A DNA stretch of 64,000 bases from positions 124,001 to 188,000 of IMG/VR virus record IMGVR_UViG_3300028275_000006; one strand, given 5' to 3'. Below, one piece after another: positions 3,147 through 38,353 of this stretch (position 1 is the stretch's first letter; each line of letters opens with the position of its first letter). The translations under genes and the position numbers were made by a program. The notes beneath the pieces were generated by a model, which worked only from the letters and a program-made list of their open reading frames with translations, did no database searches and was not told the DNA's origin.

Positions 3147-3221
3147 TGGTCCCGCTACTACGAATCGAACGTAGACTTACTCTTTAGGAGAGAGTCGTTC
3201 TATCCATTGAACTATAGCGAG
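3147..3221 (-). tRNA. tRNA-Arg(CCT)
   Basis: Cloverleaf, loop CT-CCT-AA, encoded CCA. Confidence 0.9.
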
Positions 3222-3231
3222 GGAGGGAATT

Positions 3232-3339
3232 TGGTGTGACCGGGAGGGTTCGAACCTCCAAGGACGGCATATCGCCTAGTCCCGACCCACGGAGTGTTTC
3301 ACAACAGTCCTGGAGCTCTGCCTATTCGCTCACGGTCAC
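3232..3339 (-). ncRNA. atypical 108-nt tRNA-like RNA with expanded anticodon/variable region
   Basis: Acceptor GTGACCG/CGGTCAC-A-CCA, D arm and T arm GGAGG-TTCGAAC-CCTCC; no canonical anticodon arm. Confidence 0.7.
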
Positions 3340-3345
3340 ATACTA

Positions 3346-3374
3346 AGTATATAACCTTTTCAGCAGTTTGTCAA
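3346..3374 (-). promoter_or_regulatory. sigma70-type promoter for the 3339/3221 RNAs
   Basis: TTGACA-17nt-TATACT. Confidence 0.8.
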
Positions 3375-3811
3375 CGGGTTATGAGGTATTCGTAGTTCAC
3401 TGTGTTGTCGTTTTCTTGCAACACACAGGCACCATTTCTGATATGGAACTTGTAGGCCATTTCAGTTTTTGGGCTAAGTGTTACAAAACGATTAACAGTT
3501 GGGAAAAGTTCTTTTATTTGATCCACTACACCAAAAAGTAGCTCTGCGGCCGCACCCGGCGCATAACTCCAAATTGTATAGAAGATTGCTGTAGTTGGTT
3601 CTGTGGGTGTTTTAGCCAAATCTTCAACAGTTGTTGGCACAAAATCGTGCAGACTAACACAGACCATTGCACGTGGTTTTTCGCCTTCTACAGTGGTGGC
3701 GACAAATCTGCTACCGCTAACACGAAATTCTTTGGGAATTTCTGGACGTACTGGATCATCCTTGATATAGTCAAGTAATGGATTAGTAGTTTCTCTGATT
3801 AATGTTAGCAT
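3371..3811 (-). CDS. hypothetical protein, possibly GNAT-like fold
   Basis: ORF preceded by TAAATA; FYTIWSY..GAA and RFVTLSP motifs; fold is a guess. Confidence 0.6.
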   Translation of the reverse strand: MLTLIRETTNPLLDYIKDDPVRPEIPKEFRVSGSRFVATTVEGEKPRAMVCVSLHDFVPTTVEDLAKTPTEPTTAIFYTIWSYAPGAAAELLFGVVDQIKELFPTVNRFVTLSPKTEMAYKFHIRNGACVLQENDNTVNYEYLITR

Positions 3812-3849
3812 ATAACTATTTAGCATTTAGTGGGCAGATTATGGTGTTA

Positions 3850-3924
3850 TGGTGGTAACGGTGAGATTCGAACTCACACCTTGCTCCGTATGAAGGAGGT
3901 GCACGACCATTATGCTACGTTACC
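3850..3924 (-). tRNA. tRNA-Met or Ile2 (CAT), elongator
   Basis: Cloverleaf, paired G1-C72, loop TT-CAT-AC, CCA. Confidence 0.85.
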
Positions 3925-3927
3925 AGA

Positions 3928-4163
3928 TTATTAGTAAGATGTCCCGAGAGTTTTGGTTTGGGTAAGGCCATCCGACGGTGCGATTCGTCCCTCTCTTTGT
4001 CTAGCCCAACATGAAGTTCTTGTAGTCTCAATCCGCTCACCTTGCACCGGCGCTTGATACATATACTCTACAGCATTAAAGTTTATAACTTCAATTAACA
4101 AAAACTTCCGATCTTTGTTAACTCCTTGCGGATGCTTTTAGAACCTTAACTACTTACTAATAA
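3928..4163 (-). ncRNA. candidate stem-closed ncRNA F
   Basis: 11-bp terminal inverted repeat TTATTAGTAAG/CTTACTAATAA; internal hairpins incl. CCGCAAGG. Confidence 0.45.
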
Positions 4164-4165
4164 AA

Positions 4166-4434
4166 GGGGTGGAGAGAGAAAGGCAAGTAATAGACTGGAC
4201 AATGTACAAGCGGGCTCTATAAAGATACCCTTAACAAGTCACAAGGCGCAAAGCACAGGGACCTGTATATTTCCAGTTAGCAACTCACAAAGTCGATTAA
4301 TATATAGAACTGGTTCACACAAGCACGAAACGTTTTCAAGACGTTTTGCCAGTAGTTGATGTTCGGTCTCTATAAGAGATCAAACCTTAGGCATGTAGCC
4401 TAAGTCTGTCTATCCTAATCTCCTTCTCTACTCC
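4166..4434. ncRNA. candidate stem-closed ncRNA G
   Basis: Ends complementary over ~30 nt (GGGGTGGAGAGAGAAAGG..TAGAC / GTCTATCCT..TCTCTACTCC); no convincing ORF. Confidence 0.45.
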
Positions 4435-4463
4435 AGGCTCGGGCTTTCGCCTTTGCCAAAACT

Positions 4464-4537
4464 TGGTTGCGGGACCTGGAATCGAACCAGGATCTAGAGC
4501 TTATGAGACTCTTGAGTTACCGTTTCTCTATCCCGCG
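4464..4537 (-). tRNA. initiator-type tRNA-fMet(CAT)
   Basis: C1:A72 mismatch, loop CT-CAT-AA, CCA. Confidence 0.85.
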
Positions 4538-4541
4538 ATAA

Positions 4542-4676
4542 CTTTATAGGTGCTCTCTGTTCGACTCGAACGAAACCTGCTGAGCTCCTTATCTTCCTGG
4601 CACTTTCGGTGGGTAGTCGACTTAGCACCTAACTCGTGTTATCCAGTGTAGTTCAGCTCAGAGAGCATTTATAAAG
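4542..4676 (-). ncRNA. candidate stem-closed ncRNA A with T-loop-like hairpin
   Basis: Terminal stem CTTTATAAATGCTCTCTG/CAGAGAGCACCTATAAAG; TTCG-TTCGAGT-CGAA hairpin. Confidence 0.5.
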
Positions 4677-4872
4677 TGTCTAGCCACTCCCACCACAGGA
4701 GCCCTAAACCGAGCTGTTACTCTGTCCACTAGCCTTTCCATTTAGACGGTGCTGAGGTCCGCCTTTGTGATTTCTCAAGTCGCTTTAAACAAGCCTTGCG
4801 GTAGATCCAATGCACCGAGCCATTAAGGTGTAGCAATTACCTAACTCTATCACGCTGAGTTAACGCGGGGTC
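4677..4872 (-). ncRNA. candidate structured ncRNA H sharing a motif with the GOLLD-like RNA
   Basis: TAGTGGACAGAGTAACAG (4714-4731) is 15/18 identical to 7212-7229; CCGCAAGG hairpin. Confidence 0.5.
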
Positions 4873-4874
4873 TG

Positions 4875-5447
4875 TTACAGTAAACCTTCTGCTTGCAGAA
4901 CTGCTTCTGTTTTGTCAGACAATTGGATAGTTGTCTGAACATTTAACTCTAGGATTTCATCCTGAAGTTTTTGTTTCTGCTTTTTAGCAGTTGCCACTCT
5001 ACGACGGAATCCGTCTAGATCTTCACGAGTGAGCACACTAGTGTCTACTGTGTCGTTGTAGCCATAGATGCTACGACGGTTTTCGCTTTTGTCGTTACGG
5101 ATCTTGTCCAAACGACCTGCTACAACCTTTGCGCTTTCGCGAACGGTCTTACTAGCCAATCCGTTGTAGAATTGGATTTGTTTTTCTAGATGTGCAACAT
5201 CGGCCAATCTAGTGTCGATTCTAACTTCTGTGTTAGCACCGCTGACACTTTTACGAATCTCGTAAAGTGCTTCCACTAACGCATCTCTGCGTGTAAGGTT
5301 GTCGCAGAGTGTTCCTGCAACTTTGGAAATTTCTTGTTCCGCTTCTTGGAACTCGTTGATTTTTACTGTGGTCTCAAACTGGAAACCTTTGACGGTATCG
5401 TTGATACTGTTCTGAAGTGCATTTGCCTTACGTAGGGAGATATTCAT
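4875..5447 (-). CDS. coiled-coil hypothetical protein
   Basis: Start MNISLRKANALQ with RBS; heptad-rich; loosely reminiscent of DIP1984-type proteins. Confidence 0.7.
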   Translation of the reverse strand: MNISLRKANALQNSINDTVKGFQFETTVKINEFQEAEQEISKVAGTLCDNLTRRDALVEALYEIRKSVSGANTEVRIDTRLADVAHLEKQIQFYNGLASKTVRESAKVVAGRLDKIRNDKSENRRSIYGYNDTVDTSVLTREDLDGFRRRVATAKKQKQKLQDEILELNVQTTIQLSDKTEAVLQAEGLL

Positions 5448-5513
5448 TTGTTTTTCCTTTAATGTTTCTATTATACAATCTTTTAAATCTAAATCAATGC
5501 CTTTTGGCAAAAC

Positions 5514-5589
5514 TGGAGCGGGAGACGAGGTTCGAACTCGCGACATTTACCTTGGCAAGGTAATGCTCTACCAACTGAGCTACTCCCGC
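5514..5589 (-). tRNA. tRNA-Gly(GCC)
   Basis: Canonical cloverleaf with CCA. Confidence 0.95.
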
Positions 5590-5637
5590 ATATGAAGAAC
5601 CTAAGGCAAAGTTTATAACTTATCCAAAGGCCATATA

Positions 5638-5713
5638 TGGTACACGGTACGGGAATCGAACCCGTCTTACTGACGTGAAAGGCCAGTGTCCTAAACCGAT
5701 AGACGAACCGTGC
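5638..5713 (-). tRNA. tRNA-Glu(TTC)
   Basis: Canonical cloverleaf with CCA. Confidence 0.95.
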
Positions 5714-5719
5714 ATTACT

Positions 5720-5795
5720 TGGCTCCCCAGGGTGGGATCGAACCACCGACACCCTGATTAACAGTCAGGTGCTACTACCGCTGAGCTACTAGGGA
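5720..5795 (-). tRNA. tRNA-Asn(GTT)
   Basis: Canonical cloverleaf with CCA. Confidence 0.95.
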
Positions 5796-5802
5796 ATAAA
5801 CT

Positions 5803-5877
5803 TGGTACCTGGTGACAGTTTCGAACTGCCGACCCTCTCGGTGTAAACGAGACGCTCTACCACTGAGCTAACCAGGC
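5803..5877 (-). tRNA. tRNA-Val(TAC)
   Basis: Canonical cloverleaf with CCA. Confidence 0.95.
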
Positions 5878-5887
5878 AAACTAACAT

Positions 5888-5964
<77 letters not shown>

Positions 5965-5969
5965 AATGA

Positions 5970-6045
5970 TGGAGCGGGAGGCGAGAGTTGAACTCGTCTA
6001 TTTCAGTTTGGAAGACTGACGTGTAACCACAAACACTTCACCCGC
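5970..6045 (-). tRNA. tRNA-Gly(TCC)
   Basis: Cloverleaf, loop CT-TCC-AA, CCA. Confidence 0.9.
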
Positions 6046-6051
6046 ATATTT

Positions 6052-6135
6052 TGGTGCCCCAGGAGAGACTCGAACTCTCACGGCTCTCGCCACTGGCTTC
6101 TAAGACCAGCGTGTCTACCATTCCACCACCAGGGC
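6052..6135 (-). tRNA. tRNA-Leu(TAG)
   Basis: Class II cloverleaf with long variable arm, CCA. Confidence 0.95.
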
Positions 6136-6136
6136 A

Positions 6137-6940
6137 TTAACTGACAATACTATTTAAGTATTCCTGAATTGTCGTTGCAATTTTTTCTTGCACAGACAAT
6201 TTAATTTTTGCATTCTCACCATTAGCACTCATATACTGTTTTCCGTATTCAGTACAATCTATACCAGTGTGCATAAACTCTTTAAAAATTTCTGAGTTGT
6301 CAGGATTAGGATCTCCAAACCTAACAGTCGTCCATTTAATATTTTGAGAATCTAAAAACTTAATTAACATATTGTAACCATTTCTATGTCTACGAATATG
6401 CCAATCTTTGCTTTGACTTTTTTGAAAAGCAATACCGTTTAATCGCTTTTTATGAACTTCAATTGGATATCTATCTGGATTCCATTCTCCGTCTACATAA
6501 TTTTCACGTTCAAATACATATCGTTGATTGTTATATTTGAAACTGTGTGCTATATGACTAAACGTGTAATCTGTAACTAATACATGATCCGGTTTAGGAT
6601 TCTCTGCTAGGTACTGTTTTAATCTTTTGTGATGACCTATAAAATGTCCACCGTTAATAGATATATTAACTACATTGGAAACATTTAAGAAATTAGGCCA
6701 TGCGGCTTTTTGTTCTTCTTCCCATAGATAATGCCAAACAACATTTTCCATATTGCCATTGGGCATAGGTGTTGTAACATTGTTTTCTTTTCTATGTTTT
6801 AGATACCATTTAAAAACACTTCTAAAATCATTATGGAAACGTAGACTCCAAGTCCTCGGAGCATCGTCGTTGACTATGTCACCAGCCAAACAATTATTGC
6901 CATTACTTTGGCAATCTCCTAAAATTAAAAGTGTTTTCAT
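6137..6940 (-). CDS. hypothetical AT-rich protein with GDSL-like N-terminus, inserted in tRNA array
   Basis: 267 aa ORF; LILGDCQSNG resembles the SGNH block I motif. Confidence 0.65.
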   Translation of the reverse strand: MKTLLILGDCQSNGNNCLAGDIVNDDAPRTWSLRFHNDFRSVFKWYLKHRKENNVTTPMPNGNMENVVWHYLWEEEQKAAWPNFLNVSNVVNISINGGHFIGHHKRLKQYLAENPKPDHVLVTDYTFSHIAHSFKYNNQRYVFERENYVDGEWNPDRYPIEVHKKRLNGIAFQKSQSKDWHIRRHRNGYNMLIKFLDSQNIKWTTVRFGDPNPDNSEIFKEFMHTGIDCTEYGKQYMSANGENAKIKLSVQEKIATTIQEYLNSIVS

Positions 6941-6954
6941 ATTAATAGTTATCT

Positions 6955-7031
6955 TGGCGCACCGTAGGGGACTTGAACCCCTGGCCTCCGACGTGACAGG
7001 CCGGCGCTCTGACCAACTGAGCTAACGGTGC
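6955..7031 (-). tRNA. tRNA-Asp(GTC)
   Basis: Canonical cloverleaf with CCA. Confidence 0.95.
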
Positions 7032-7036
7032 AAATT

Positions 7037-7116
7037 CTATTCTGAAACACACTAACCAACTACCAGAAGCATTTATAATGCCGTTATTCGGTTCGAGCTA
7101 ATGTGTTTTAGAATAG
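7037..7116 (-). ncRNA. candidate stem-closed ncRNA C
   Basis: 20-nt terminal stem CTATTCTAAAACACATTAGC/GTTAGTGTGTTTCAGAATAG with one A:C mismatch. Confidence 0.5.
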
Positions 7117-8005
7117 TGCTAACGCTGAGATTATACGTTAGCCAATAGTGCCTCTAGCATTATAGTCAGCCTTGCGAGCCAACCTTCTCTAGACATCCAC
7201 ATAAGCCATTACTGTACCTATGTCCACTATCAGCATCGCCGTTTTTAAAGACAGGCAGTAGTCTTGTCGCCATATGCTATTCTACGCTATCTACTCCGTT
7301 GACCTTGCGAGCCATTCAGCGGCGCTAACCACTTACGAAACTTCCAGCATAAACAGATTTCACCTTGCGAGCTACGTCTGACTCGATTACCTTGCGGCTC
7401 GAGTATTAGATGCTTTTCACATATGACCGAGGCAGTCTTTGCATTTTATAATCGATAGTTGGGATCGAACCAACAGTCCATTGCTTAAGAGGCAATTGCG
7501 TTACCATTACGCTATATCAAACCTACCGCGATGAGCTGCCTCTGTTGCTCAATAACCTTTTGGATTACTGAATACAACTCACCACATACCTTTTGTCTCG
7601 CGGACTACTCAGTGATATTTCACGATCAATGTCCTGCATCAAAACAGTCCACTAACCATTAATATTGCATACAAGCCCTTAGGAGCGACCCCTTGGACAA
7701 ATACACTACCCTTTCTCATACCAATTCGCAAGTTGGTTTTGTTAGGAAGTCAGCACCACCCGTTACTTTTCATGCACCCTGGTTCCCTTGCGGGCCAGTC
7801 GATACACATTCTTTCCCTAACACTTGCTTCATTGTTACATCCACCGGTCTTCTCAGTGAACGCTACCTCGCGGTAGTGAGCAGGCTTGTTTACATGAACC
7901 ATTACTGGCGGAGTTGCGTAGGCTTACCTCCTTTGGGTTGATCACTCAACTTATTCTTCGTCAACGGCGAACCGCCAACAGGATAATAAACTACCCTTAA
8001 ATTTT
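7115..8005 (-). ncRNA. giant structured ncRNA, GOLLD-like, containing a tRNA
   Basis: ~900 nt without credible ORF; many GNRA-capped hairpins (CTCGCAAGG x3, CCGCAAGG x2, CCGCGAG x2); inside a phage tRNA cluster; boundaries approximate. Confidence 0.7.
7450..7521 (-). tRNA. tRNA-Lys(CTT) embedded in giant ncRNA, no encoded CCA
   Basis: Intact D, anticodon (ATTGC-CT-CTT-AA-GCAAT) and T arms; weak acceptor stem. Confidence 0.8.
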
Positions 8006-8171
8006 TACCATTAAAAAATAACATTACACCCTATGGGATGAAACGTATTTCTGAGTGGAGTTCGATTCTCCTCATAAGCCATTGTTCACGGTTTTCTCAG
8101 AAGGGTAAGATGGCCTTATCCTTCATAAGTCTATGCGTCCATAGACGATACCCGTCAATGCTATTTCTTAA

Positions 8172-8257
8172 TGGTGGATGCGGCTGGAGTCGAACCAGCA
8201 GTGCCGTAAGGCGGCGGATTTACAGTCCACTGGGGTTACCAATTTTCCTACACATCC
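8172..8257 (-). tRNA. tRNA-Tyr(GTA)
   Basis: Class II cloverleaf with CCA. Confidence 0.95.
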
Positions 8258-8344
8258 ATATCTGCTTGAAATTTTTAAAGAACTAGGTTAATTTCTTAAC
8301 TAGTCTCTATTGTATATGAACTTTAGAAACTAGTCAAGACATTT

Positions 8345-8439
8345 TGGCAGTGAGTAAGGGATTCGAACCCTTGATCCCCGTTTTTGCAGGAATGCCTTCT
8401 TAGCAGGAAGGTGCCTTCGACCAGCTCGGCCAACTCACT
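8345..8439 (-). tRNA. tRNA-Ser(GCT)
   Basis: Class II cloverleaf with CCA. Confidence 0.95.
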
Positions 8440-8447
8440 ATATTTGT

Positions 8448-8476
8448 ATTATACGATCAACTGTTAAACAAGTCAA
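8448..8476 (-). promoter_or_regulatory. internal sigma70-type promoter in tRNA array
   Basis: TTGACT-17nt-TATAAT; a similar TTGACT/TACAAT site lies near 8310-8338. Confidence 0.75.
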
Positions 8477-8483
8477 CACCTTT

Positions 8484-8573
8484 TGGCCGAAGCGGTGAGA
8501 TTCGAACTCACGGACCCTTTCGGATCGTCTGTTTTCAAGACAGGTGCAATAAACCGGACTCTGCCACGCTTCG
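8484..8573 (-). tRNA. tRNA-Ser(TGA)
   Basis: Class II cloverleaf with CCA. Confidence 0.95.
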
Positions 8574-8619
8574 TTGTTTTACTTGTATAATTCGTTGTAG
8601 ATAGAATCTGCTACAAATG

Positions 8620-8697
8620 TGGTACCCCTGCTCCGATTCGAACGGAGAGAACTTCTCCTTTTGAGAGAGACGACTTTACCAATTTGTCCACAGGGGT
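8620..8697 (-). tRNA. tRNA-Leu(CAA), short variable loop
   Basis: Loop CT-CAA-AA, 6-nt variable region, CCA. Confidence 0.85.
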
Positions 8698-8702
8698 ATA
8701 TC

Positions 8703-8776
8703 TGGTGCTCAAGGAAAGAATCGAACTTTCGATTGTGTCGTACCAAGACACTGGTATACCATTTACCTACAAGAGC
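8703..8776 (-). tRNA. tRNA-Thr(GGT)
   Basis: Loop TT-GGT-AC, two acceptor mismatches, CCA. Confidence 0.8.
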
Positions 8777-8778
8777 CT

Positions 8779-8850
8779 TGGCGCCTCTGAGTAGATTCGA
8801 ACTACTATAACCTGGTTTAGAAGACCTGGCACTGCTCCATCAGCAGAGGC
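8779..8850 (-). tRNA. tRNA-Arg(TCT), reduced D arm
   Basis: 72 nt, loop CT-TCT-AA, CCA. Confidence 0.8.
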
Positions 8851-8851
8851 A

Positions 8852-8928
8852 TGGTACCCTTGGTTGGATTCGAACCTACACACAACGGATTTTAAATCCA
8901 TTCGCATTACCAATTAGCGTACAAGGGC
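8852..8928 (-). tRNA. tRNA-Leu(TAA), short variable loop
   Basis: Loop TT-TAA-AA, 5-nt variable region, CCA. Confidence 0.85.
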
Positions 8929-8935
8929 ATAATTA

Positions 8936-9011
8936 TGGTGCCGCCCCTTGGGATCGAACCAAGTTCCTCGGTGCTTCAAACCGGTGCAATGACCACATTT
9001 GCTAAAGCGGC
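8936..9011 (-). tRNA. tRNA-Phe(GAA)
   Basis: Cloverleaf, loop TT-GAA-GC, CCA. Confidence 0.9.
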
Positions 9012-9017
9012 GATATT

Positions 9018-9092
9018 TGGGGTGAAGCCGGGAATCGAACCCTGCCTTACTGTTTCACAGACAGCCGTGCGGACCACTACACTAGCAACACC
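9018..9092 (-). tRNA. tRNA-His(GTG)
   Basis: G-1:C73, loop CT-GTG-AA, CCA. Confidence 0.9.
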
Positions 9093-9094
9093 AT

Positions 9095-9171
9095 TGGCCG
9101 GCCCTGAGAGACTCGAACTCCCAACCTCCAGTTTCGAAGACTGGCACTCTAATCCATTGAGTTAAGGACCG
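9095..9171 (-). tRNA. tRNA-Arg(TCG)
   Basis: Cloverleaf, A20, CCA. Confidence 0.92.
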
Positions 9172-9178
9172 TTAAAAT

Positions 9179-9252
9179 TGGCAGGCCTACCAGGACTCGA
9201 ACCTGGAACGACTGAGTCAAAGTCAGTTGTGTTACCATTACACCATAGGCCA
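9179..9252 (-). tRNA. tRNA-Gln(TTG)
   Basis: Cloverleaf, weak 1:72 pair, CCA. Confidence 0.93.
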
Positions 9253-9262
9253 ACAGATTGAA

Positions 9263-9475
9263 TTTGTAAGTAGTTGCCCCATCGTTATAGCAACCATTCA
9301 CCCATGTATATAAAGCCGGCTGGGACTCGGTACGTCACTTGGGATACTAGTCCAGTTAGCAACCAATCTGCAGGGATCTTCCGATCCCCCGGGAGTTGAA
9401 CCCGTCCCCTTTTACTATTAAGGTAGTTCGAACTTACCTACAATAGCGTGACATTCTCTTGCTGACACTTACAAA
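9263..9475 (-). ncRNA. candidate stem-closed ncRNA E
   Basis: Terminal TTTGTAAGT/ACTTACAAA; internal CGGG-TTCAACT-CCCG T-arm-like hairpin and GGGATCGGAAGATCCC hairpin. Confidence 0.5.
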
Positions 9476-9478
9476 ACT

Positions 9479-9553
9479 TGGTGCCCCAGGATGGAATCGA
9501 ACCACCACACCCTGCTTACAAAACAGGACCTCTACCACTAAGGATACAAGGGC
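9479..9553 (-). tRNA. tRNA-Thr(TGT)
   Basis: Cloverleaf with CCA. Confidence 0.92.
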
Positions 9554-9558
9554 AAAAT

Positions 9559-9636
9559 TGGTCTCCACGGTACGATTCGAACGTACAGCCTCCTGACTCC
9601 AGATCAGGCCGTCTACCAGATTGACATTACGCAGAG
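9559..9636 (-). tRNA. tRNA-Pro(TGG) variant with C33 and A37
   Basis: Stem CCTGA/TCAGG, loop TC-TGG-AG, CCA. Confidence 0.75.
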
Positions 9637-9646
9637 ATAAAAATAA

Positions 9647-9722
9647 TTGCGACCGAAGGACTCGAACCTTCGCGGTAATCTAGAATGCCCCGGCAAGGCC
9701 GGTTAACCCACCATTGTCGCAA
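9647..9722 (-). pseudogene. tRNA-like element without CCA or valid anticodon arm
   Basis: TTGCGAC/GTCGCAA stem plus perfect T arm GAAGG-TTCGAGT-CCTTC. Confidence 0.5.
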
Positions 9723-9725
9723 ATT

Positions 9726-9800
9726 TGGTGGAGGCCGAGGAAATCGAATCCTTCTAGACATCTTCCTTGCAAGGGAAGACCGTAGCCCACTACTGCCCCC
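9726..9800 (-). tRNA. tRNA-Ala(TGC), reduced D loop
   Basis: G3:U70, loop CT-TGC-AA, D hairpin GTAG-TGGG-CTAC, CCA. Confidence 0.8.
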
Positions 9801-9885
9801 AAATTGGTGTTAGTTTCTATACCACCCATTGAAACTAACAAACATTGAGAGAACATGGATGAACCCACAAGATCTCTATTTGCTC

Positions 9886-9960
9886 TGGTATAGCGTACGG
9901 GGATCGAACCCGCCTAGTCACCTTGAAAGGGTGATGACCTCCCCAGAAGTCGAACGCTAT
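9886..9960 (-). tRNA. tRNA-Glu(TTC), second copy
   Basis: Cloverleaf, loop CT-TTC-AA, CCA. Confidence 0.9.
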
Positions 9961-9966
9961 GTAAAT

Positions 9967-10040
9967 TGGTTCCTGGACCGAGAATTGAACTCAGAATGAC
10001 CGGTTATCAGCCGATTGTTATACCATTTAACTATCCAGGA
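9967..10040 (-). tRNA. tRNA-Ile(GAT)
   Basis: Cloverleaf with CCA. Confidence 0.93.
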
Positions 10041-10130
10041 ATAATACTATACAAAAAGAAACTAACGACAATGCGCTATGCACCCAGAGTCTATAGTTCC
10101 TGGCTGTGGTTAGTTTGTTTTTATACACTA

Positions 10131-10225
10131 CCATATGGAAGCACTCTTATGCCTTTTTCGTCATAAGATGGTGGCCCGTCCTTACTACTGACGCTATGCG
10201 ACCAGTTAAGAATGCTTTCATATGG
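10131..10225 (-). ncRNA. candidate stem-closed ncRNA B
   Basis: CCATATGAAAGCATTCTTA/TAAGAGTGCTTCCATATGG with one A:C mismatch; begins at the CCA of tRNA-Lys(TTT). Confidence 0.5.
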
Positions 10226-10297
10226 TAGGGGCACAGAGAATCGAACTCTGATTTACGGGTTAAAAGCCCGCTACTTTAACCATTAAGTTATACCCCC
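10223..10297 (-). tRNA. tRNA-Lys(TTT)
   Basis: Cloverleaf with CCA. Confidence 0.93.
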
Positions 10298-10300
10298 ATA

Positions 10301-10376
10301 TGGTCCCTGCTGTGAGATTCGAACTCACACCTCATTGATTAAGAGTCAAGTGCGCTACCATTGACGCTAAACAGGG
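10301..10376 (-). tRNA. tRNA-Lys(CTT)
   Basis: Cloverleaf with CCA. Confidence 0.92.
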
Positions 10377-10438
10377 TTGTACGTATTGATTTGATTTTAC
10401 GTGCCAACCCTAGACCATACGGGAGATCTAGAGTGACA

Positions 10439-10459
10439 CTAACGTTTAGCACGTTTCAT
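10439..10459 (-). CDS. micro-ORF MKRAKR-amber
   Basis: Strong SD AAGGAGAG; TAG stop leads into a long hairpin. Confidence 0.4.
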   Translation of the reverse strand: MKRAKR

Positions 10460-10471
10460 GCTACTCTCCTT

Positions 10472-10534
10472 TTAATATTTTTTCAAAACTTGATACAACA
10501 CGAACATTATAACTAACACTACAAGTACTGCCAT
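10472..10534 (-). CDS. 20-aa hydrophobic micro-protein MAVLVVLVIMFVLYQVLKKY
   Basis: SD TAAGGAG, single TM-like stretch. Confidence 0.55.
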   Translation of the reverse strand: MAVLVVLVIMFVLYQVLKKY

Positions 10535-10547
10535 AATATTCTCCTTA

Positions 10548-10637
10548 TGGTCCCCCGTTGAGGAATCGAACCTCATCCTGGACCTTATCTAGATTAATCG
10601 GTTATAAGCCGACCTGCTCTCCATGAGCTAACGGGGG
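10548..10637 (-). tRNA. tRNA-Ile(TAT) with 21-nt variable insertion
   Basis: Stem GTCGG/CCGAT, loop CT-TAT-AA, 90 nt, CCA. Confidence 0.8.
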
Positions 10638-10645
10638 ATATAACC

Positions 10646-10723
10646 TGGAGCAACGGGTCAGATTTGAACTGACGGTTTTACGGATTTGCAATCCGTTGCA
10701 TTGGGCCTCTCTGCCACCGTTGC
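10646..10723 (-). tRNA. tRNA-Cys(GCA)
   Basis: Cloverleaf, U73, CCA. Confidence 0.93.
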
Positions 10724-10728
10724 ATTAT

Positions 10729-10803
10729 TGGCGTACCCCCAGGGACTCGAACCCCGACTAGCAGTTTTGGAGACTGTCGTGCTGCCATTAACACTAGGGA
10801 TAC
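10729..10803 (-). tRNA. tRNA-Trp(CCA)
   Basis: Cloverleaf, G73, CCA. Confidence 0.93.
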
Positions 10804-15926: not shown

Positions 15927-16000
15927 TGGTGCGCTAGACAGGAATCGAACCTGCTATCGGGAGTTTAGAAGTCCCTGCCTATCCATTGAGCTTCAAGCGC
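15927..16000 (-). tRNA. Arg(TCT)-derived tRNA; best-paired register gives anticodon CTA
   Basis: 74 nt; GGGAC-TTCTAAA-CTCCC arm; A20; CCA. Confidence 0.7.
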
Positions 16001-16212: not shown

Positions 16213-17013
16213 TTACTTACCGTTGGTAGTAACAGTAGGAGTTACAACACCGTTGATAACCAAAGTTTGACCTTTGAAGTTGGCAATAGCATCGGGCAAC
16301 TTACGCATGGCTTCTGCTTCTGCCTCCGCCTTCAACAATGGAATTGCCATCGGATTGGCCTGCATCGATTCGTTACGTTTCTTAGCAGTAGCAACTTTGA
16401 CTTCTTCGGTCTTGTACTCGTTCTTGGCTTTGACCAATTCGTTGGCGCTGGCTACAACAGAGTCTGCAGGCACAATGTTACGAATAAGAACTTGTCCAAT
16501 TACAATAGTACCATCCAACTTTTCTTCAGCCAGTGTACGAGTAACTTGTTCTTTGATTTCAGTTTCCATTGCTTGACGTGCATCACCCATTTCCAATGCT
16601 TCATACTTACGTGCGGCTTTGTAGATAGCATTACGTGAAGCATTAAAGATGTAATTATACATCAAGTAAACATCGCCATTATGACTAGCGTGGAATGATT
16701 TATTTTTTGTATTATAAATCTCGGCCACTTGTGCTTGATTGATATTATAAGTAACCAACGCATCAAAGTCCTTCATTGTGCTATTATCTTTAGCCAATGG
16801 AGTCATGTCTTCAACTTTGACACTAATTTCCTTAGTTGGGAATGTAAGTACATCGCCGATAATAGTTTGGTTAAACGAACCAGGAAGCAATTCCTCATTC
16901 TTGACCTGCTTGTCAAAACCGACACGGAGACCAACTTCACCAGTTTCGATACGAGTACAACCCGTTGCCAAAACTGCGGCGGCAAGAATAGAGAGAGTTA
17001 AAATACGCTTCAT
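16213..17013 (-). CDS. SPFH/band 7 (prohibitin-like) lipoprotein
   Basis: Lipobox LATGC; RIETGEVGLRV SPFH start; coiled-coil tail. Confidence 0.85.
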   Translation of the reverse strand: MKRILTLSILAAAVLATGCTRIETGEVGLRVGFDKQVKNEELLPGSFNQTIIGDVLTFPTKEISVKVEDMTPLAKDNSTMKDFDALVTYNINQAQVAEIYNTKNKSFHASHNGDVYLMYNYIFNASRNAIYKAARKYEALEMGDARQAMETEIKEQVTRTLAEEKLDGTIVIGQVLIRNIVPADSVVASANELVKAKNEYKTEEVKVATAKKRNESMQANPMAIPLLKAEAEAEAMRKLPDAIANFKGQTLVINGVVTPTVTTNGK

Positions 17014-20552: not shown

Positions 20553-21632
20553 TTAAAAAGCGTCCCAGTAAGAGTAAGTCTTCTCTTTAACTTTGGTAAG
20601 GATAAGGCTTGCACCTTCCTTGTTAGTGAACACGTACTTGGTACCATTGTCATCAATCTTCTTCAACTCGTCCGGAGTGAATCGGATACCCTGCCAATCC
20701 CAATCTTCGTCACCAGTTTCTTCGTCACGTTCAATAACCTTGTAAGAAATGTTGACATTCTTGTTAAGAGGATTGCCTTCCCATTCCTTGTCTTCAAAAT
20801 TGTTTTCTTTGACTTCTTCGCCATTGATAACCAACTTGATTGCATAACGAGAAGTCGAACCGTATTCTGGTTTGGCATTCAGCATAGTCATTGCTTCCTG
20901 CGGAGTTTCGTCGAAACGATTCATTTCTTCAACCAATGCCTTCAGCATGTCAAAGTTGAATTGGTCAAACGTACCAGCAATACCTACAATCTTTTCAATG
21001 TGTTCTTTGTTTTGAAGATTGTCCATGCAGTATTCACGAATGAAGTCTGCATCCAAGCCCTTATACTCAAGGCTGTAATAAACACGACCAGGACGATTAC
21101 GCATATGGCTATTAACACGCCATTTGTCGTTACAAGTAAGCACAAACAACTTTTTGGTTGGGTACACACCGTCCAGCAGAGTCAGCATCTGTTCTTGCTC
21201 GTGTTCATCATAGACTTTTTCAAATTCATCAAACACTACAATTACAGGTTGTTCAATACTTTGAATGAACGCATTGAATTGGTCTCCACACCAAGGAGCA
21301 TTGATTACAATAGTAGGAATACCTTTGTCATATCCCTTGACAGAAAGCATCTTAGCCAATAGTGTTTTGCCAGAACCTTTTTCACCAGTAAGCATTACGC
21401 CAGTAGTACTGGGACGATCCTCAAACGCATAAAGAATACGGTCGGCACGTTTGTTTGTATCGCCGTAAATCTTGCCTTTGATTTCGAACTTGTCAATTGT
21501 TTCAAGAAACAACTGCCCAGACATCTCGTCCTTTTTAACGACATAGTTACCAGCCGGCAACTTCTCTTGAATATCAAGTGCTTCTTTTTTGGATACTCGG
21601 TAAGTGCTACCTTGCTTTAGGAAATAGGTCAT
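20553..21632 (-). CDS. AAA+ ATPase
   Basis: Walker A GEKGSGKT, Walker B VVFDEFEK, NRPGR; promoter 21669-21697. Confidence 0.9.
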   Translation of the reverse strand: MTYFLKQGSTYRVSKKEALDIQEKLPAGNYVVKKDEMSGQLFLETIDKFEIKGKIYGDTNKRADRILYAFEDRPSTTGVMLTGEKGSGKTLLAKMLSVKGYDKGIPTIVINAPWCGDQFNAFIQSIEQPVIVVFDEFEKVYDEHEQEQMLTLLDGVYPTKKLFVLTCNDKWRVNSHMRNRPGRVYYSLEYKGLDADFIREYCMDNLQNKEHIEKIVGIAGTFDQFNFDMLKALVEEMNRFDETPQEAMTMLNAKPEYGSTSRYAIKLVINGEEVKENNFEDKEWEGNPLNKNVNISYKVIERDEETGDEDWDWQGIRFTPDELKKIDDNGTKYVFTNKEGASLILTKVKEKTYSYWDAF

Positions 21633-21712
21633 GTGATCTTTCTATGAAATAAAACTGCGATACTGTGTATTATAGGCTCGGACAGGGCATCTGTCAATGT
21701 GTTTGGTAAAAT

Positions 21713-21735
21713 AAAAAAGGGCCCGAAGGCCCTTT
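21713..21735 (-). terminator. terminator after tmRNA
   Basis: AAAGGGCC-TTCG-GGCCC hairpin followed by T6. Confidence 0.8.
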
Positions 21736-21739
21736 GGTT

Positions 21740-22066
21740 GTTTGGGTTACAAGGTAAGTCCTACCCCGGAGTTGCAGTTTCTTAGGCTGCTACTAGACCA
21801 TTGTCGGCTGTGAAGCCTTCAACAGTGAAGTACTCAAATGTAGATGCGTTTGCATTTACTAGTTTTGCTTGATTTACGGTCATCGCCTACCGTGTTGCCG
21901 TCTCTACTATCTACCCCTGTCGAAACCATGGCAGGCCCATCATAAAAACACAATACCAAAGTAAATTTACAATGAATACCAAAGTAAATTTATGTCCTTA
22001 TGGTGGACCTGGCGGGAGTCGAACCCGCGTCCAGAAGTCCTTCGCTTTGAAGGGATTACAACAATT
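21740..22066 (-). ncRNA. ssrA: circularly permuted (two-piece) tmRNA
   Basis: Acceptor piece ending GGTTCGACTCCCGCCAGGTCCACCA (22001) precedes coding piece starting GGGCCTG (21938); G3:U70; tag frame 21782-21853 ANASTFEYFTVEGFTADNGLVAA*. Confidence 0.9.
21952..21992. repeat. 18-nt tandem direct repeat in tmRNA intervening segment
   Basis: AATACCAAAGTAAATTTA at 21952-21969 and 21975-21992. Confidence 0.9.
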
Positions 22067-22068
22067 CT

Positions 22069-22647
22069 TTAAACGCCTGCCTTTGCTAATGTGCCAAATA
22101 TCCAAGGTTTTGGATCTAAGTCAATTGTCCAAGATGTCGGTTCATTTCTCATATCTTTTTTGTACACAATATTTATTTGGTCGTGTGTTAGTTTGACTAA
22201 GAAGCCGTCTGTTAATTGTTTTAGATTAGCCTTAACTGTTGCGTAATCTACAAAGGCAACAGCGAATGTTCCTTTAATTTGGACTATCATTAAATGATTA
22301 AAAACTTTGTCTAGTGTAGTTCTTTGATTCTTACTTTCGTAAACATTTTTTAATTTAAGACTGATTGTCTTTTTAGGAGTTCCTGACTTTGCGTAGAACA
22401 AAGGTTCGTTGCCAGTTTTAACTTCTACGTCGCCATTGGTCCAATCGGTAAATTTTATATCGTAATCGCGAACGTCAGTCCACTCGATGTTCTTTTTATG
22501 ATTAGATAATTGCATTGCCGCAATAATGAATTTTTCTTTCATCATTCGATTTGTGGATTCATTTAATACTGTCTGATGACAGATGTTATTACAAGCATCT
22601 GAAAACTTGTCAATATCTACCCAATCTAAAAATTCATTGTACTGCAT
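22069..22647 (-). CDS. hypothetical protein, possible PD-(D/E)xK nuclease fold
   Basis: AT-rich; D..GDVEVKT motif. Confidence 0.55.
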   Translation of the reverse strand: MQYNEFLDWVDIDKFSDACNNICHQTVLNESTNRMMKEKFIIAAMQLSNHKKNIEWTDVRDYDIKFTDWTNGDVEVKTGNEPLFYAKSGTPKKTISLKLKNVYESKNQRTTLDKVFNHLMIVQIKGTFAVAFVDYATVKANLKQLTDGFLVKLTHDQINIVYKKDMRNEPTSWTIDLDPKPWIFGTLAKAGV

Positions 22648-24871: not shown

Positions 24872-25435
24872 CTATACTATATGATCCGCTACCCCAAAGT
24901 CAACCACTTCTTGTGCAGTTAGGTAAACATCGCTGGCTGGTAGTAGTTTTGCTTTAACTCTACTTTTAACCAAGCCTGTTGTTTCGGTTAGAATTGTTAT
25001 CATCTTTTCATTTAACAATTCGGTTTCTTTCATTTCTGCTTTTAGGTCGTGATACTTAGCATCCATTCCGGATGTAAATTGGTGACACATAAAACTAGTA
25101 TTACTAGCCGCATAACGATGCTTTTTATCACCGCAGGCAAAAATTAAAAATGCCGCACTCATGACAGCACCAATTCCAATAGTTCTTACAATATGTGGAC
25201 TGCTACGCATTACATCAATTAACGCTAGAGCCTGATACAAATCTCCGCCCGTGCTGTTAATATACAAGGTCAAAGTTCTACCTTCGCCTTGTAAATTTTC
25301 ATAGAGAATCCATTTGATGGCTTCGCCTACTGTATCTTCATCTATCTCTCCATTCAAATAAAAAGTAGAATTTTCCAGTAATCTAAGATCAATTCTATCT
25401 TCCGCATTGAACTCATCAATTTTTTTCATTTTCAC
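24872..25435 (-). CDS. clpP: ClpP-family protease subunit
   Basis: LYINSTGG, GAVMSAA (catalytic Ser), MCHQ (His), YLTAQE..DFG..D. Confidence 0.88.
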   Translation of the reverse strand: MKMKKIDEFNAEDRIDLRLLENSTFYLNGEIDEDTVGEAIKWILYENLQGEGRTLTLYINSTGGDLYQALALIDVMRSSPHIVRTIGIGAVMSAAFLIFACGDKKHRYAASNTSFMCHQFTSGMDAKYHDLKAEMKETELLNEKMITILTETTGLVKSRVKAKLLPASDVYLTAQEVVDFGVADHIV

Positions 25436-38277: not shown

Positions 38278-38353
38278 TGGTGCCCCTTGTCCGACTCGAA
38301 CAGACCACCTACTGATTACAAATCAGTTGCTCTACCAGATGAGCTAAAGGGGC
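38278..38353 (-). tRNA. tRNA-Thr(TGT), orphan copy
   Basis: Canonical cloverleaf with CCA; own promoter near 38364-38393. Confidence 0.95.

What the first reader, a model, noticed from the sequence alone, without database searches (positions are those of the whole stretch)
21740..22066. Phage-encoded two-piece (permuted) tmRNA with a long unusual tag
Seen: the acceptor piece comes first, then a 62-nt intervening segment carrying an 18-nt tandem repeat, then the coding piece. G3:U70, helix AGGGGT/ACTTCT and a pk1-like ACGGT/ACCGT are present. The tag is ANASTFEYFTVEGFTADNGLVAA (23 aa). Known: permuted tmRNAs occur in Alphaproteobacteria, some Betaproteobacteria and some cyanobacteria, and tags are usually about 10 aa. 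Standard one-piece searches would miss it.
Basis: partly seen in the sequence, partly recalled or inferred. Interest (0 to 1): 0.75.

Follow-up and report, generated by a model that had tools for sequence, protein, structure and literature searches.

The report
Jumbo-phage two-piece tmRNA, long tag
A giant river phage carries its own, highly expressed, two-piece ribosome-rescue RNA (tmRNA); phage tmRNAs of this form are already known, but this one belongs to a large group, so far seen only in phages, whose degradation tags are two to three times the usual length and share a conserved start.

Summary
On the minus strand, window 22065-21712 holds a circularly permuted tmRNA gene. ARAGORN gives the same 23-aa tag, and Rfam scores it at 138 bits (tmRNA_permuted) and 129 bits (beta_tmRNA). 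The order is acceptor piece, 62-nt intervening segment (IVS) with two exact 18-nt repeats, then coding piece. G3:U70, A73 and an encoded CCA are present.

The helices are supported by compensatory changes across 39 homologues. In river metatranscriptomes the coding piece forms its own contig at about 190-200x depth, against 8-20x for neighbouring genes. The IVS is not covered at all.

The host genome is a 212-kb fragment of a jumbo phage of roughly 385 kb that resembles Xanthomonas phage XacN1. No SmpB gene was found in it or in complete relatives, so it must use the host's SmpB.

Phage two-piece tmRNAs are already documented, standard tools find this one, and it is of the beta type rather than a new permutation.

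The new element is the tag. I found 63 distinct tags of 22-33 aa, all starting A[NKT]A[DNS]TF[DE][FY], in at least 119 viral contigs and in none of 185,579 bacterial species genomes. All stay in frame and synonymous changes predominate. The phage also encodes ClpA, ClpP, DnaJ and peptide deformylase. Why the tag is extended is unknown.

The parts
22097..22124 (-). Weak sigma-70-like promoter candidate (TTGACT, 16 nt, GATATT) inside the 3' end of the upstream ORF. It is a possible start of the tmRNA precursor. Read-through from the upstream ORF (stop codon at 22071-22069) is equally possible.
   Evidence: 9 of 12 consensus matches, no more sites than the shuffled control gives; it aligns with the promoter part of the beta_tmRNA model. 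This assignment is inferred, not shown.
22001..22065 (-). Acceptor piece. It contains the 5' strand of helix P2a (UGUUG, 22063-22059), the strand ACUUCUG, the T arm (22028-22012), the 3' acceptor strand CAGGUCC (22011-22005, with U70 at 22007), the discriminator A73 (22004) and an encoded CCA (22003-22001). Its 5' end is not mapped.
   Evidence: T arm and acceptor stem are 100% paired in 39 homologues, and U70 is invariant. RNA depth here is no higher than in the flanks. That result is uninformative, because an RNA of about 65 nt is expected to be lost in standard library preparation.
21939..22000 (-). Intervening segment (IVS) of 62 nt, removed from the precursor. An 11-bp closing stem begins directly after CCA and ends just before the leader UGAU. 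The core holds two exact 18-nt direct repeats (21992-21975 and 21969-21952).
   Evidence: length and repeats; closing stem 91% paired, 10 of 11 pairs with compensatory change; acceptor stem plus IVS folds at -29.7 kcal/mol, z = -5.9. RNA depth is 0 here in runs X20 and X21, and a strain in DNA run X1 has 21947-21996 replaced by 17 other bases; the same repeat-bearing cassette occurs in L003 and L034.
21712..21938 (-). Coding piece. It contains the 5' acceptor strand GGGCCUG (21938-21932, with G3 at 21936), the strand CAGGGGU, the 3' strand of helix P2a (CAACA), PK1 (about 21892-21866), the tag reading frame, a post-tag hairpin and the terminator hairpin.
   Evidence: separate RNA contigs with no mismatch cover 21766-21919 (depth 198, X20) and 21743-21925 (depth 191, X21).
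21782..21853 (-). Tag reading frame: resume codon GCA at 21853-21851, 23 codons (ANASTFEYFTVEGFTADNGLVAA), stop codon UAA at 21784-21782.
   Evidence: The resume codon sits at the position homologous to that of short-tag relatives (columns 300-310). All 63 unique long-tag frames are open and end in TAA.
21750..21768 (-). Hairpin after the stop codon, in the position of tmRNA helix 5: 7 bp with a 5-nt loop.
   Evidence: fold; relatives keep it through compensatory changes, for example U-A to C-G in L008 and L032.
21708..21735 (-). Intrinsic terminator of the tmRNA gene: 8-bp G+C-rich stem, 4-nt loop, then a run of U.
   Evidence: It aligns with the terminal hairpin of the beta_tmRNA model. RNA depth is 0 in X20 and X21 immediately downstream of it.

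Best explanation
This is a functional, strongly expressed ssrA gene of a jumbo phage, in the circularly permuted beta-type form.

**Proposed mechanism.**
1. One precursor is transcribed. It starts either at a weak promoter inside the upstream ORF or by read-through from that ORF, and it stops at the terminator at 21735-21716.
2. In the precursor the two acceptor strands pair. The IVS folds back on itself through a conserved closing stem, so that the acceptor stem and the IVS form one long hairpin.
3. Host RNase P cuts 5' of G1 (21938). Host nucleases trim the acceptor piece back to its encoded CCA (22001). The IVS is discarded.
4. Two RNAs remain, of about 65 nt and about 225 nt. They are held together by the 7-bp acceptor stem and the P2 helices.
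5. Host alanyl-tRNA synthetase charges the RNA through G3:U70 and A73. Host SmpB and EF-Tu deliver it to stalled ribosomes; the phage has no SmpB gene.
6. Translation resumes at GCA (21853) and adds 23 residues ending in LVAA. This releases the ribosome and marks the protein for AAA+ proteases.

**Shown here:** the gene's anatomy, structural conservation, selection on the tag peptide, accumulation of the coding piece and absence of the IVS from RNA.

**Inferred from what is known of tmRNA:** the processing enzymes, charging with alanine, use of host SmpB, tagging and degradation.

**Likely benefit.** The tmRNA keeps ribosomes free during infection. This phage also supplies 32 tRNAs and an amber-suppressor tRNA, whose read-through would by itself create ribosomes stalled at mRNA ends. 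The phage's own ClpA, ClpP, DnaJ and peptide deformylase may deal with the tagged products.
For: - **Detection.** ARAGORN and two Rfam models score far above threshold.
- **Structure.** In 39 homologues 89.6% of cells are paired, against 71% after shuffling and 40-48% with partners slid. Compensatory change is seen in 37 of 46 pairs. G3:U70 is invariant.
- **Expression.** Exact-match RNA contigs covering only the coding piece reach depth about 190-200, against 8-20 in the flanks. The IVS and the stretch beyond the terminator are uncovered.
- **Translation of the tag.** All 63 unique long tags are in frame from the homologous resume codon and all stop at TAA. Most end in ALAA-like residues. Codons 6-8 vary mainly at third positions. 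In the largest subgroup there are 1275 synonymous against 612 non-synonymous codon differences over 16 codons. Close relatives keep the pattern xVEGFTADxx[LI]VA.
- **No SmpB** in this record, in XacN1, or in two records that CheckV rates 100% complete.
- **Phage origin.** rIIA/rIIB homologues and terminase genes in related records. The tag motif was not found in any tmRNA among 185,579 bacterial and archaeal species genomes.
- **Proteostasis genes in the same genome.** A ClpA homologue at 885 bits over its full length, ClpP at 259 bits (above the cut-off), DnaJ and peptide deformylase.
Against: - **RNA ends.** No RNA end is mapped. The contigs stop 13-19 nt short of the predicted 5' end and 31-54 nt short of the terminator's U run.
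- **Limits of the RNA data.** The acceptor piece shows no raised depth. Depths come from assembled contigs without strand information, not from reads.
- **Biochemistry.** Charging, SmpB binding and tagging were not tested, and the host is unknown.
- **Promoter.** The promoter candidate is no better than chance.
- **RNA-level constraint in the tag.** Codons 1, 3 and 5 of the tag show almost no synonymous variation. Part of the tag region also forms a hairpin with compensatory changes. So some of the conservation acts on the RNA, not the peptide.
- **ClpA link.** The ClpA gene tracks the roughly 350-kb phage group rather than tag length as such.
Confidence: 0.85

Rival explanations
1. It acts as a decoy rather than a tagger. 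The RNA would soak up host SmpB or block host trans-translation, as the tRNA-like-domain-only ssrA of mycobacteriophage DS6A is thought to do, and the reading frame would be incidental.
For: A precedent is cited in PMC4131195 and PMC11915505. The phage has no SmpB of its own, so its RNA must compete for the host's.
Against: The frame is kept open in 63 distinct versions, each with a canonical hydrophobic-AA end and a TAA stop, and synonymous change is in excess. PK1, the resume-codon context and the post-tag hairpin are all conserved. A decoy needs none of these.
Confidence: 0.05
2. The true tag is short. Translation would resume further downstream, and the first 10-20 'codons' would be an RNA spacer or structural element rather than coding sequence.
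For: Several relatives end in a complete canonical 10-aa tag, for example ...ANESRFALAA and ...ANDAEFAIAA. Codons 1, 3 and 5 never or almost never vary even synonymously. The middle of this tag can form an 11-bp hairpin that shows compensatory changes in L188.
Against: The resume codon lies at the same distance from PK1, and in the same UAAAU-GCA-AAC context, as in short-tag relatives. Every length variant between 22 and 33 codons keeps the frame from that codon to the stop, without internal stops. In this gene the C-terminal half (TADNGLVAA) is not a complete canonical tag and no second resume context is visible.
Confidence: 0.07
3. The two pieces are made as two separate transcripts. The repeat-bearing IVS would hold an internal promoter or a protein-binding site for the coding piece, rather than being spacer that is processed away.
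For: Both 18-nt repeats are kept intact, while the 5-nt spacer between them differs, in L003 and (with one mismatch) L034. Each repeat contains the palindrome TAAATTTA. The coding piece is far more abundant than the upstream RNA. A TATGAT hexamer lies directly before G1.
Against: That hexamer abuts G1, so a transcript started from it would begin inside the acceptor strand. The promoter scan reports no site in the IVS. The 18-mer occurs nowhere else in the genome. A co-occurring strain replaces the repeats with an unrelated 17 nt. Across 165 homologues the IVS core falls into 74 unrelated cassettes, while the closing stem covaries. That pattern fits a processed hairpin.
Confidence: 0.06
4. It is a bacterial ssrA on a mis-binned contig or at a prophage border, or a recently captured host gene with no role for the phage.
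For: tmRNA genes are common integration sites, so some tmRNAs in 'viral contigs' may be host genes (PMC9004378). Part of the short-tag loci may be of that kind; I did not check them one by one.
Against: The gene lies 20 kb or more from either end of a 212-kb record, among rII genes, tRNA arrays and a GOLLD RNA. The identical gene occurs on a 270-kb viral contig, and 85%-identical or same-family genes occur on 265-383-kb contigs, four of which were tested and have a terminase gene. The motif scan of bacterial genomes found no such tmRNA.
Confidence: 0.02

Closest known systems
Betaproteobacterial two-piece tmRNA (Rfam RF01850; Sharkady and Williams 2004, cited from memory and through PMC9004378)
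   Same: The gene order is the same: acceptor piece, IVS, coding piece. The same helices are matched over the full length of the model, at 129 bits against a cut-off of 84. G3:U70, PK1 and the terminal hairpin are shared.
   Different: The carrier is a phage. The IVS is about twice the consensus length (the model alignment shows 51 inserted bases where the consensus has 18). The tag has 23 residues rather than about 10. In an even sample of 151 Pseudomonadota genomes none reached the model's cut-off. All 10 phage loci tested did.
tmRNA of Xanthomonas jumbo phage XacN1 (AP018399.1, 384,670 bp)
   Same: It is the nearest cultured relative found. It has a beta-type permuted gene (123 and 108 bits) and its tag starts with the same ANANTF[DE]Y. 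The genomic company is the same: a GOLLD RNA, tRNA arrays, amber-suppressor tRNAs and rIIA/rIIB. It has no SmpB.
   Different: The XacN1 tag has only 12 residues (ANANTFDYALAA). Its IVS is longer and unrelated. No ClpA-like gene was found in XacN1. rIIA identity to the window's protein is only 29.5%.
Two-piece tmRNAs of marine myophages (Melnitz, pelagimyophages; Buchholz et al. 2022, PMC9004378)
   Same: They are phage-encoded permuted ssrA genes in T4-like or large aquatic phages, found with ARAGORN.
   Different: The paper places those genes with the alphaproteobacterial lineage and reports a glutamine riboswitch at the 3' end. Here the gene is beta-type, no riboswitch was detected, and the tag is long.
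One-piece tmRNAs of mycobacteriophages (Bxz1 group) and Bacillus phage G (PMC4131195)
   Same: They are phage-borne ssrA genes in large phage genomes rich in tRNA genes.
   Different: They have the standard, unpermuted gene form.
Long ssrA tags of Mollicutes (Mesoplasma florum; PMC9382460)
   Same: The tag is much longer than 10-11 residues. In Mollicutes the extra length goes with a change of protease, to Lon.
   Different: They are bacterial one-piece tmRNAs whose tags end in NYAFA. The phage tags mostly keep the ClpX/ClpA-type ALAA-like end and add a different, conserved N-terminal module. This is a functional analogy only. No link between the phage tags and any protease was tested.

Membership tests
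tmRNA (ssrA) | tRNA-like domain with a 7-bp acceptor stem and a T arm | tested here: met
   Rfam alignments. Both helices are 100% paired in 39 homologues, with compensatory changes at 3 and 2 pairs respectively.
tmRNA (ssrA) | Alanine identity elements: G3:U70, discriminator A73 and a 3' CCA | tested here: met
   G21936 pairs with U22007, A73 is at 22004 and CCA at 22003-22001. The pair is U-G in 39 of 39 homologues. Charging itself was not tested.
tmRNA (ssrA) | Short reading frame without a start codon, resuming at an alanine codon downstream of PK1 and ending in hydrophobic residues plus a stop codon | tested here: met
   GCA at 21853, 23 codons, ending in LVAA, then UAA. The PK1 stem is 82% paired with compensatory changes; the second PK1 stem is only 64% paired in my alignment. 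The frame is conserved in 63 variants.
tmRNA (ssrA) | Works together with SmpB | not testable with these tools
   No SmpB gene in the phage or in complete relatives. Use of the host protein is inferred.
tmRNA (ssrA) | Adds the tag to proteins on stalled ribosomes | not testable with these tools
   Only indirect evidence: selection acting on the peptide.
Permuted (two-piece) tmRNA | The 3' acceptor half with its CCA is encoded upstream of the 5' acceptor half and the coding part, with an intervening segment between them | tested here: met
Permuted (two-piece) tmRNA | The precursor is processed into two RNAs and the intervening segment is lost | tested here: inconclusive
   The coding piece accumulates as its own RNA contig, and the IVS has depth 0 in two metatranscriptomes. 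That fits processing. The acceptor piece was not seen to be enriched, and no RNA end was mapped.
Beta-type permuted tmRNA (RF01850) | Full-length match above the curated score, and the best match within the Rfam clan | tested here: met
   129.4 bits against 84, model positions 1-331. The beta-specific helices P2a and ACUUCUG/CAGGGGU covary.
Beta-type permuted tmRNA (RF01850) | Carried by a betaproteobacterium | tested here: not met
   The carrier is a phage and its host is unknown. Cultured phages with the same type of gene infect Xanthomonas, Pseudomonas and Alcaligenes.

The most novel reading that the evidence does not exclude
The long tags form a phage-only branch of ssrA in which a conserved N-terminal module, A[NKT]A[DNS]TF[DE][FY] plus 10-20 further residues, has been placed in front of a canonical degron. 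On this reading the module serves the phage. It could hand rescued proteins to the phage's own ClpA/ClpP machinery, or to another protease such as Lon. That would give an infection-specific tagging and recycling pathway, separate from the host's, in phages that also bring tRNAs and an amber-suppressor tRNA. A second strand of the same reading is that the beta-type permuted gene with exchangeable IVS cassettes is mainly a phage-borne gene. It moves between unrelated jumbo phages and works in hosts whose own tmRNA is one-piece.
Probability: 0.2. Interest if true: 0.7.

Novelty: new variant of a known kind. Interest (0 to 1): 0.5.

Why it matters
Phage-borne tmRNAs are usually listed in genome papers and not examined further. 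Three results here go beyond that.
- One of them is among the most abundant phage RNAs in natural river samples.
- A whole group of phage tmRNAs has changed what is written onto rescued proteins, under selection acting on the peptide.
- The same phages carry their own ClpA, ClpP, DnaJ and peptide deformylase.

Together this gives a testable question: do large phages run their own protein quality-control or protein-recycling pathway during infection? It also offers a set of natural, possibly orthogonal degradation tags. The cultured relative XacN1 and its Xanthomonas host provide a system in which to start.

Tried and rejected
- **Near-identical phage genomes.** megablast of 20 kb of the window against 50,697 phage records found none. 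blastn of the gene matched cultured phages only over the T arm and acceptor region.
- **The 18-mer as a phage promoter or genome-wide motif.** Rejected: there are only the two copies.
- **A neighbouring gene as a dedicated partner.** Rejected. The downstream AAA ATPase belongs to a widespread phage family (phrog_2376) with its own perfect sigma-70 promoter. The ClpP-like ORF 3 kb away is divergent and is not shared with XacN1. Genes conserved next to long-tag tmRNAs in other contigs are ordinary auxiliary genes: ribonucleotide reductase, glutaredoxin, peroxiredoxin, DUF454, an aldolase and a porin-like protein.
- **Co-occurrence of suppressor tRNAs with tmRNAs.** Uninformative, because the fetched loci are too short.
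- **TAG recoding.** No evidence. TAG is simply a rare stop codon, ending 11 of 218 long ORFs.
- **Host inference and a phage-versus-bacteria tree.** An even sample of 151 Pseudomonadota genomes gave no beta-type gene to compare with.
- **ClpA as a marker of long tags.** Only partly true. It is present in 5 of 9 long-tag records and 2 of 18 short-tag records, and it tracks the roughly 350-kb phage group.
- **SspB.** Not found.
- **Literature.** The tag strings appear in no searchable paper. Sharkady and Williams 2004 could not be opened.

Full report
**What is in the sequence**

On the minus strand ARAGORN reports a permuted tmRNA (21691-22093) with the tag ANASTFEYFTVEGFTADNGLVAA. Rfam 15 reports tmRNA_permuted at 138.4 bits (cut-off 47) and beta_tmRNA at 129.4 bits (cut-off 84), the latter over all 331 model positions.

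Reading the strand gives this layout:
- **Acceptor piece**, about 22065-22001. It contains a T arm, the strand CAGGUCC, A73 and an encoded CCA.
- **Intervening segment (IVS)**, 62 nt, 22000-21939.
- **Coding piece**, from G1 at 21938. It contains GGGCCUG, the conserved UGGUUUCGAC, the P2 strands and the first pseudoknot (PK1).
- **Tag frame**, from the resume codon GCA at 21853 through 23 codons to UAA at 21784-21782.
- **A 7-bp hairpin** at 21768-21750.
- **An intrinsic terminator** at 21735-21716.

G3:U70 is 21936:22007. The IVS holds two exact copies of an 18-mer, 5 nt apart. These are the only two copies in the window and in the whole 212-kb record, where 0.03 would be expected by chance. 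Only 'tandem' is slightly loose, and the 3' boundary was set about 30 nt too early.

**Where it sits**

The window is bases 124001-188000 of a single 212,542-bp IMG/VR virus record with 39.6% G+C. CheckV rates it 55% complete, which implies a genome of about 385 kb.

The window holds 32 tRNA genes, one of them an amber-suppressor (anticodon CUA), and a GOLLD RNA. rIIA and rIIB homologues lie 1.5-4.5 kb downstream of the tmRNA.

The best match for rIIA is Xanthomonas jumbo phage XacN1 (384,670 bp). XacN1 has the same combination of GOLLD RNA, tRNA arrays, two CUA suppressor tRNAs and a permuted tmRNA. The DNA comes from river metagenomes. The host is unknown.

**Is the RNA structure real?**

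I collected permuted tmRNA genes from IMG/VR with a pattern that spans the T arm, CCA, a 50-80-nt gap and UGGUUUCGAC.

An alignment of 39 non-redundant genes, including four from cultured phages, was scored against the structure read from this gene:

| Measure | Result |
|---|---|
| Cells forming a standard pair | 89.6% |
| Same, after shuffling | 71% |
| Same, with partners slid by 1-3 columns | 40-48% |
| Pairs with compensatory change | 37 of 46 |
| Acceptor stem and T arm | always paired |
| G3:U70 | invariant |
| Helix ACUUCUG/CAGGGGU | 97.8% paired |
| Helix P2a | 93% paired |
| First PK1 stem | 82% paired |
| Second PK1 stem | 64% paired |

My alignment is weakest at the second PK1 stem.

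It begins right after CCA and ends just before the leader UGAU. It is 91% paired, with compensatory change at 10 of 11 pairs. With the acceptor stem it forms one long hairpin (-29.7 kcal/mol, z = -5.9).

**The intervening segment**

Only the closing stem is conserved. The cores of 165 IVSs fall into 74 unrelated sequence clusters, and the same core can occur with quite different tags.

The repeat-bearing core of this gene recurs in two other genes:
- L003, on a 383-kb contig, with a 24-aa tag.
- L034, with an ordinary 10-aa tag.

In both, the two repeats are kept (one mismatch in L034) while the 5-nt spacer between them differs. This hints at some constraint on the repeats.

Against that, a strain in the same river DNA sample replaces 21947-21996 with 17 unrelated bases. 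The 18-mer is not a genome-wide motif, and no promoter-like site lies in the IVS. I read the core as an exchangeable filler of a processed hairpin. What the repeats do, if anything, is unexplained.

**Expression**

Assembled contigs of three river metatranscriptomes and one DNA run were laid on 21401-22600.

| Region | RNA run X20 | RNA run X21 |
|---|---|---|
| Stand-alone coding-piece contig (no mismatch) | 21766-21919, depth 198 | 21743-21925, depth 191 |
| Flanking genes | depth 8-17 | depth 15-20 |
| IVS (21961-22000) | 0 | 0 |
| Beyond the terminator (21601-21720) | 0 | 0 |

The DNA run shows the phage at an even depth of 11-12. The coding piece is therefore roughly 10-20 times more abundant than neighbouring messages, and the IVS does not accumulate. 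That is what a processed two-piece tmRNA should look like.

The limits of this evidence are:
- The data are contigs, not reads, and carry no strand information.
- The contigs stop short of the predicted ends.
- The roughly 65-nt acceptor piece is not enriched, as expected for an RNA of that size in standard libraries.

**The tag**

The resume codon is not an ARAGORN guess. It lies at the same alignment position, in the same UAAAU-GCA-AAC context and at the same distance from PK1, as in relatives with ordinary tags.

A scan for the start of the frame plus the motif found 6 places in 185,579 bacterial and archaeal species genomes. None of them lies in a tmRNA. The same scan hit the 119-contig limit in viral contigs.

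Across all fetched loci there are 63 distinct long-tag frames:
- **Length and ends.** They are 22-33 codons long. All are open from the homologous resume codon and all end in TAA. 42 end in ALAA and most of the others in similar residues.
- **Conserved start.** The start reads A, N/K/T, A, D/N/S, T, F, D/E, F/Y.
- **Canonical C-terminal part.** Many tags then end in what looks like a complete ordinary tag, for example ...ANESRFALAA or ...ANDAEFAIAA. The family therefore looks like a phage module placed in front of a canonical degron.
- **XacN1.** It has the short version, ANANTFDYALAA.
- **This gene's subgroup.** It keeps the pattern xVEGFTADxx[LI]VA(A).

Selection acts partly on the peptide. 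Codons 6-8 vary mainly at third positions. In the largest subgroup, synonymous codon differences outnumber non-synonymous ones 1275 to 612 over 16 codons. These are pairwise counts, so they are not independent.

Selection also acts partly on the RNA. Codons 1, 3 and 5 are GCA, GCA and ACA in 62-63 of 63 sequences. The middle of this tag can form a hairpin that is kept by compensatory changes in L188.

**Partners**

No SmpB gene is present in this record, in XacN1, or in two related records rated 100% complete. No SspB was found either. The RNA must therefore use the host's SmpB, alanyl-tRNA synthetase, EF-Tu and processing enzymes.

Cultured phages of Xanthomonas, Pseudomonas and Alcaligenes carry the same beta-type permuted gene. 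By established knowledge, two-piece tmRNAs occur in Alphaproteobacteria, some Betaproteobacteria and some cyanobacteria (PMC11915505, PMC9004378). Xanthomonas and Pseudomonas should therefore have one-piece tmRNAs. The gene form does not identify the host, and the two-piece RNA presumably works with machinery that evolved for one-piece tmRNA.

Outside the window the same phage encodes:
- a full-length ClpA homologue (746 aa; TIGR02639 at 885 bits);
- peptide deformylase and DnaJ, next to ClpA;
- a canonical ClpP (207 aa, 259 bits, above the cut-off).

The window also holds a second, divergent ClpP-like ORF at 24872-25435.

ClpA-like genes occur in 5 of 9 long-tag records and in 2 of 18 short-tag records. 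The two short-tag exceptions also belong to the roughly 350-kb group. The link to long tags is thus confounded by relatedness, genome size and incomplete records.

**Spread between phages**

The 383-kb record with the 85%-identical tmRNA and the same IVS core has a terminase gene but no rII homologues. This phage and XacN1 do have rII homologues. This suggests that the gene moves between unrelated large phages.

**Comparison with what is known**

- Phage tmRNAs have been listed since at least 2014 (PMC4131195).
- Two-piece forms in phages were counted in 2022: 53 of 133 unique sequences, mostly from aquatic phages (PMC9004378).
- Huge phages are reported to carry tmRNAs and sometimes SmpB (PMC7162821).
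- The Rfam model that detects this gene best was published in 2025 (PMC11915505).

The kind is therefore known, and the gene is of the beta type rather than a fourth permutation.

I could not find the long-tag family described anywhere. None of six tag strings occurs in the searchable literature, and no cultured phage in the 50,697-record collection matches the coding piece.

The nearest functional analogy is the long Mollicutes tag that switched protease to Lon (PMC9382460). It remains an analogy only.

**Verdict**

This is a real, conserved and strongly expressed phage-encoded beta-type two-piece tmRNA that depends on the host's SmpB. As a kind it is ordinary. Its tag family, the exchangeable IVS cassettes and the proteostasis genes carried by the same phage make it a new variant that deserves a bench test. 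Confidence in the main reading is 0.85. The reading that the long tag defines a phage-specific degradation pathway has a probability of about 0.2.

Noticed in passing
window 7122-7585 (-): A GOLLD RNA (RF02032, 207 bits against a cut-off of 150) lies inside the tRNA array, and tRNA-Lys (7449-7522) sits within its span. XacN1 has a GOLLD RNA (227 bits) in the same position relative to its tRNAs and tmRNA (L120 1311-1724).
   Followed up: partly
window 3147-10803 (-), 15927-16000 (-), 38278-38353 (-): There are 32 tRNA genes on one strand. One of them has the anticodon CUA (an amber suppressor, which ARAGORN labels 'Pyl'). XacN1 has two such suppressor genes near its tmRNA. TAG ends only 11 of 218 long ORFs in this genome, and all 63 long tmRNA tags stop at TAA. 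Suppressor read-through would create extra demand for ribosome rescue, but this link was not tested.
   Followed up: partly
G000:C1 67475-69715, about 69700-71020 and 106296-106919 (outside the window; loci L263 and L262): The phage encodes a full-length ClpA homologue (746 aa), an adjacent peptide deformylase and DnaJ, and a canonical ClpP (207 aa). Related jumbo-phage records carry ClpA-like genes of 762-786 aa, and two of them also carry a ClpX-sized gene of 404-407 aa.
   Followed up: partly
window 24872-25435 (-): A second, divergent ClpP-family ORF of canonical size (187 aa; about 100 bits, against cut-offs of 228-249). It is neither clearly a ClpP orthologue nor a head-maturation protease (62 bits against a cut-off of 120). 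Its best phage match is Synechococcus phage BUCT-ZZ01, at 44% identity.
   Followed up: partly
window 21669-21697 (-): A perfect sigma-70 consensus promoter (TTGACA, 17 nt, TATAAT; 12 of 12 matches) lies immediately after the tmRNA terminator. It faces the AAA ATPase gene at 20553-21632 (phrog_2376; 58% identical to a Microbacterium phage protein).
   Followed up: no
window 16213-17013 (-); L122 2798-3047; L123 1-197: An SPFH/Band 7 (prohibitin-family) gene lies next to rIIB in the window. Prohibitin-family genes also lie within about 1.5 kb of the permuted tmRNA in Xanthomonas phage JGB6 and Alcaligenes phage QDWS595.
   Followed up: no
window 21947-21996, in DNA run X1: A strain in the same river sample has the repeat-bearing core of the IVS replaced by 17 other bases (assembler depth 9.5, against about 11-12 for the phage).
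   Followed up: partly
loci L001-L230 (IMG/VR contigs): The cores of the IVSs behave like exchangeable cassettes. Identical cores of 40-50 nt recur in tmRNA genes with different tags and acceptor stems. There are 74 clusters among 165 IVSs.
   Followed up: partly
L003 record (G001, 383,411 bp) compared with G000: G001 has a tmRNA 85% identical to the window's, with the same IVS cassette. It lacks the rIIA/rIIB homologues that G000 shares with XacN1. This suggests transfer of the tmRNA gene between unrelated jumbo phages.
   Followed up: partly
151 Pseudomonadota genomes: None reached the curated score of the 'betaproteobacterial' tmRNA model (best 72 bits). Every phage locus tested did. In the collections searched here, this gene type was easier to find in phage contigs than in an even sample of bacteria. 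The search filters were strict and the sample is small.
   Followed up: no
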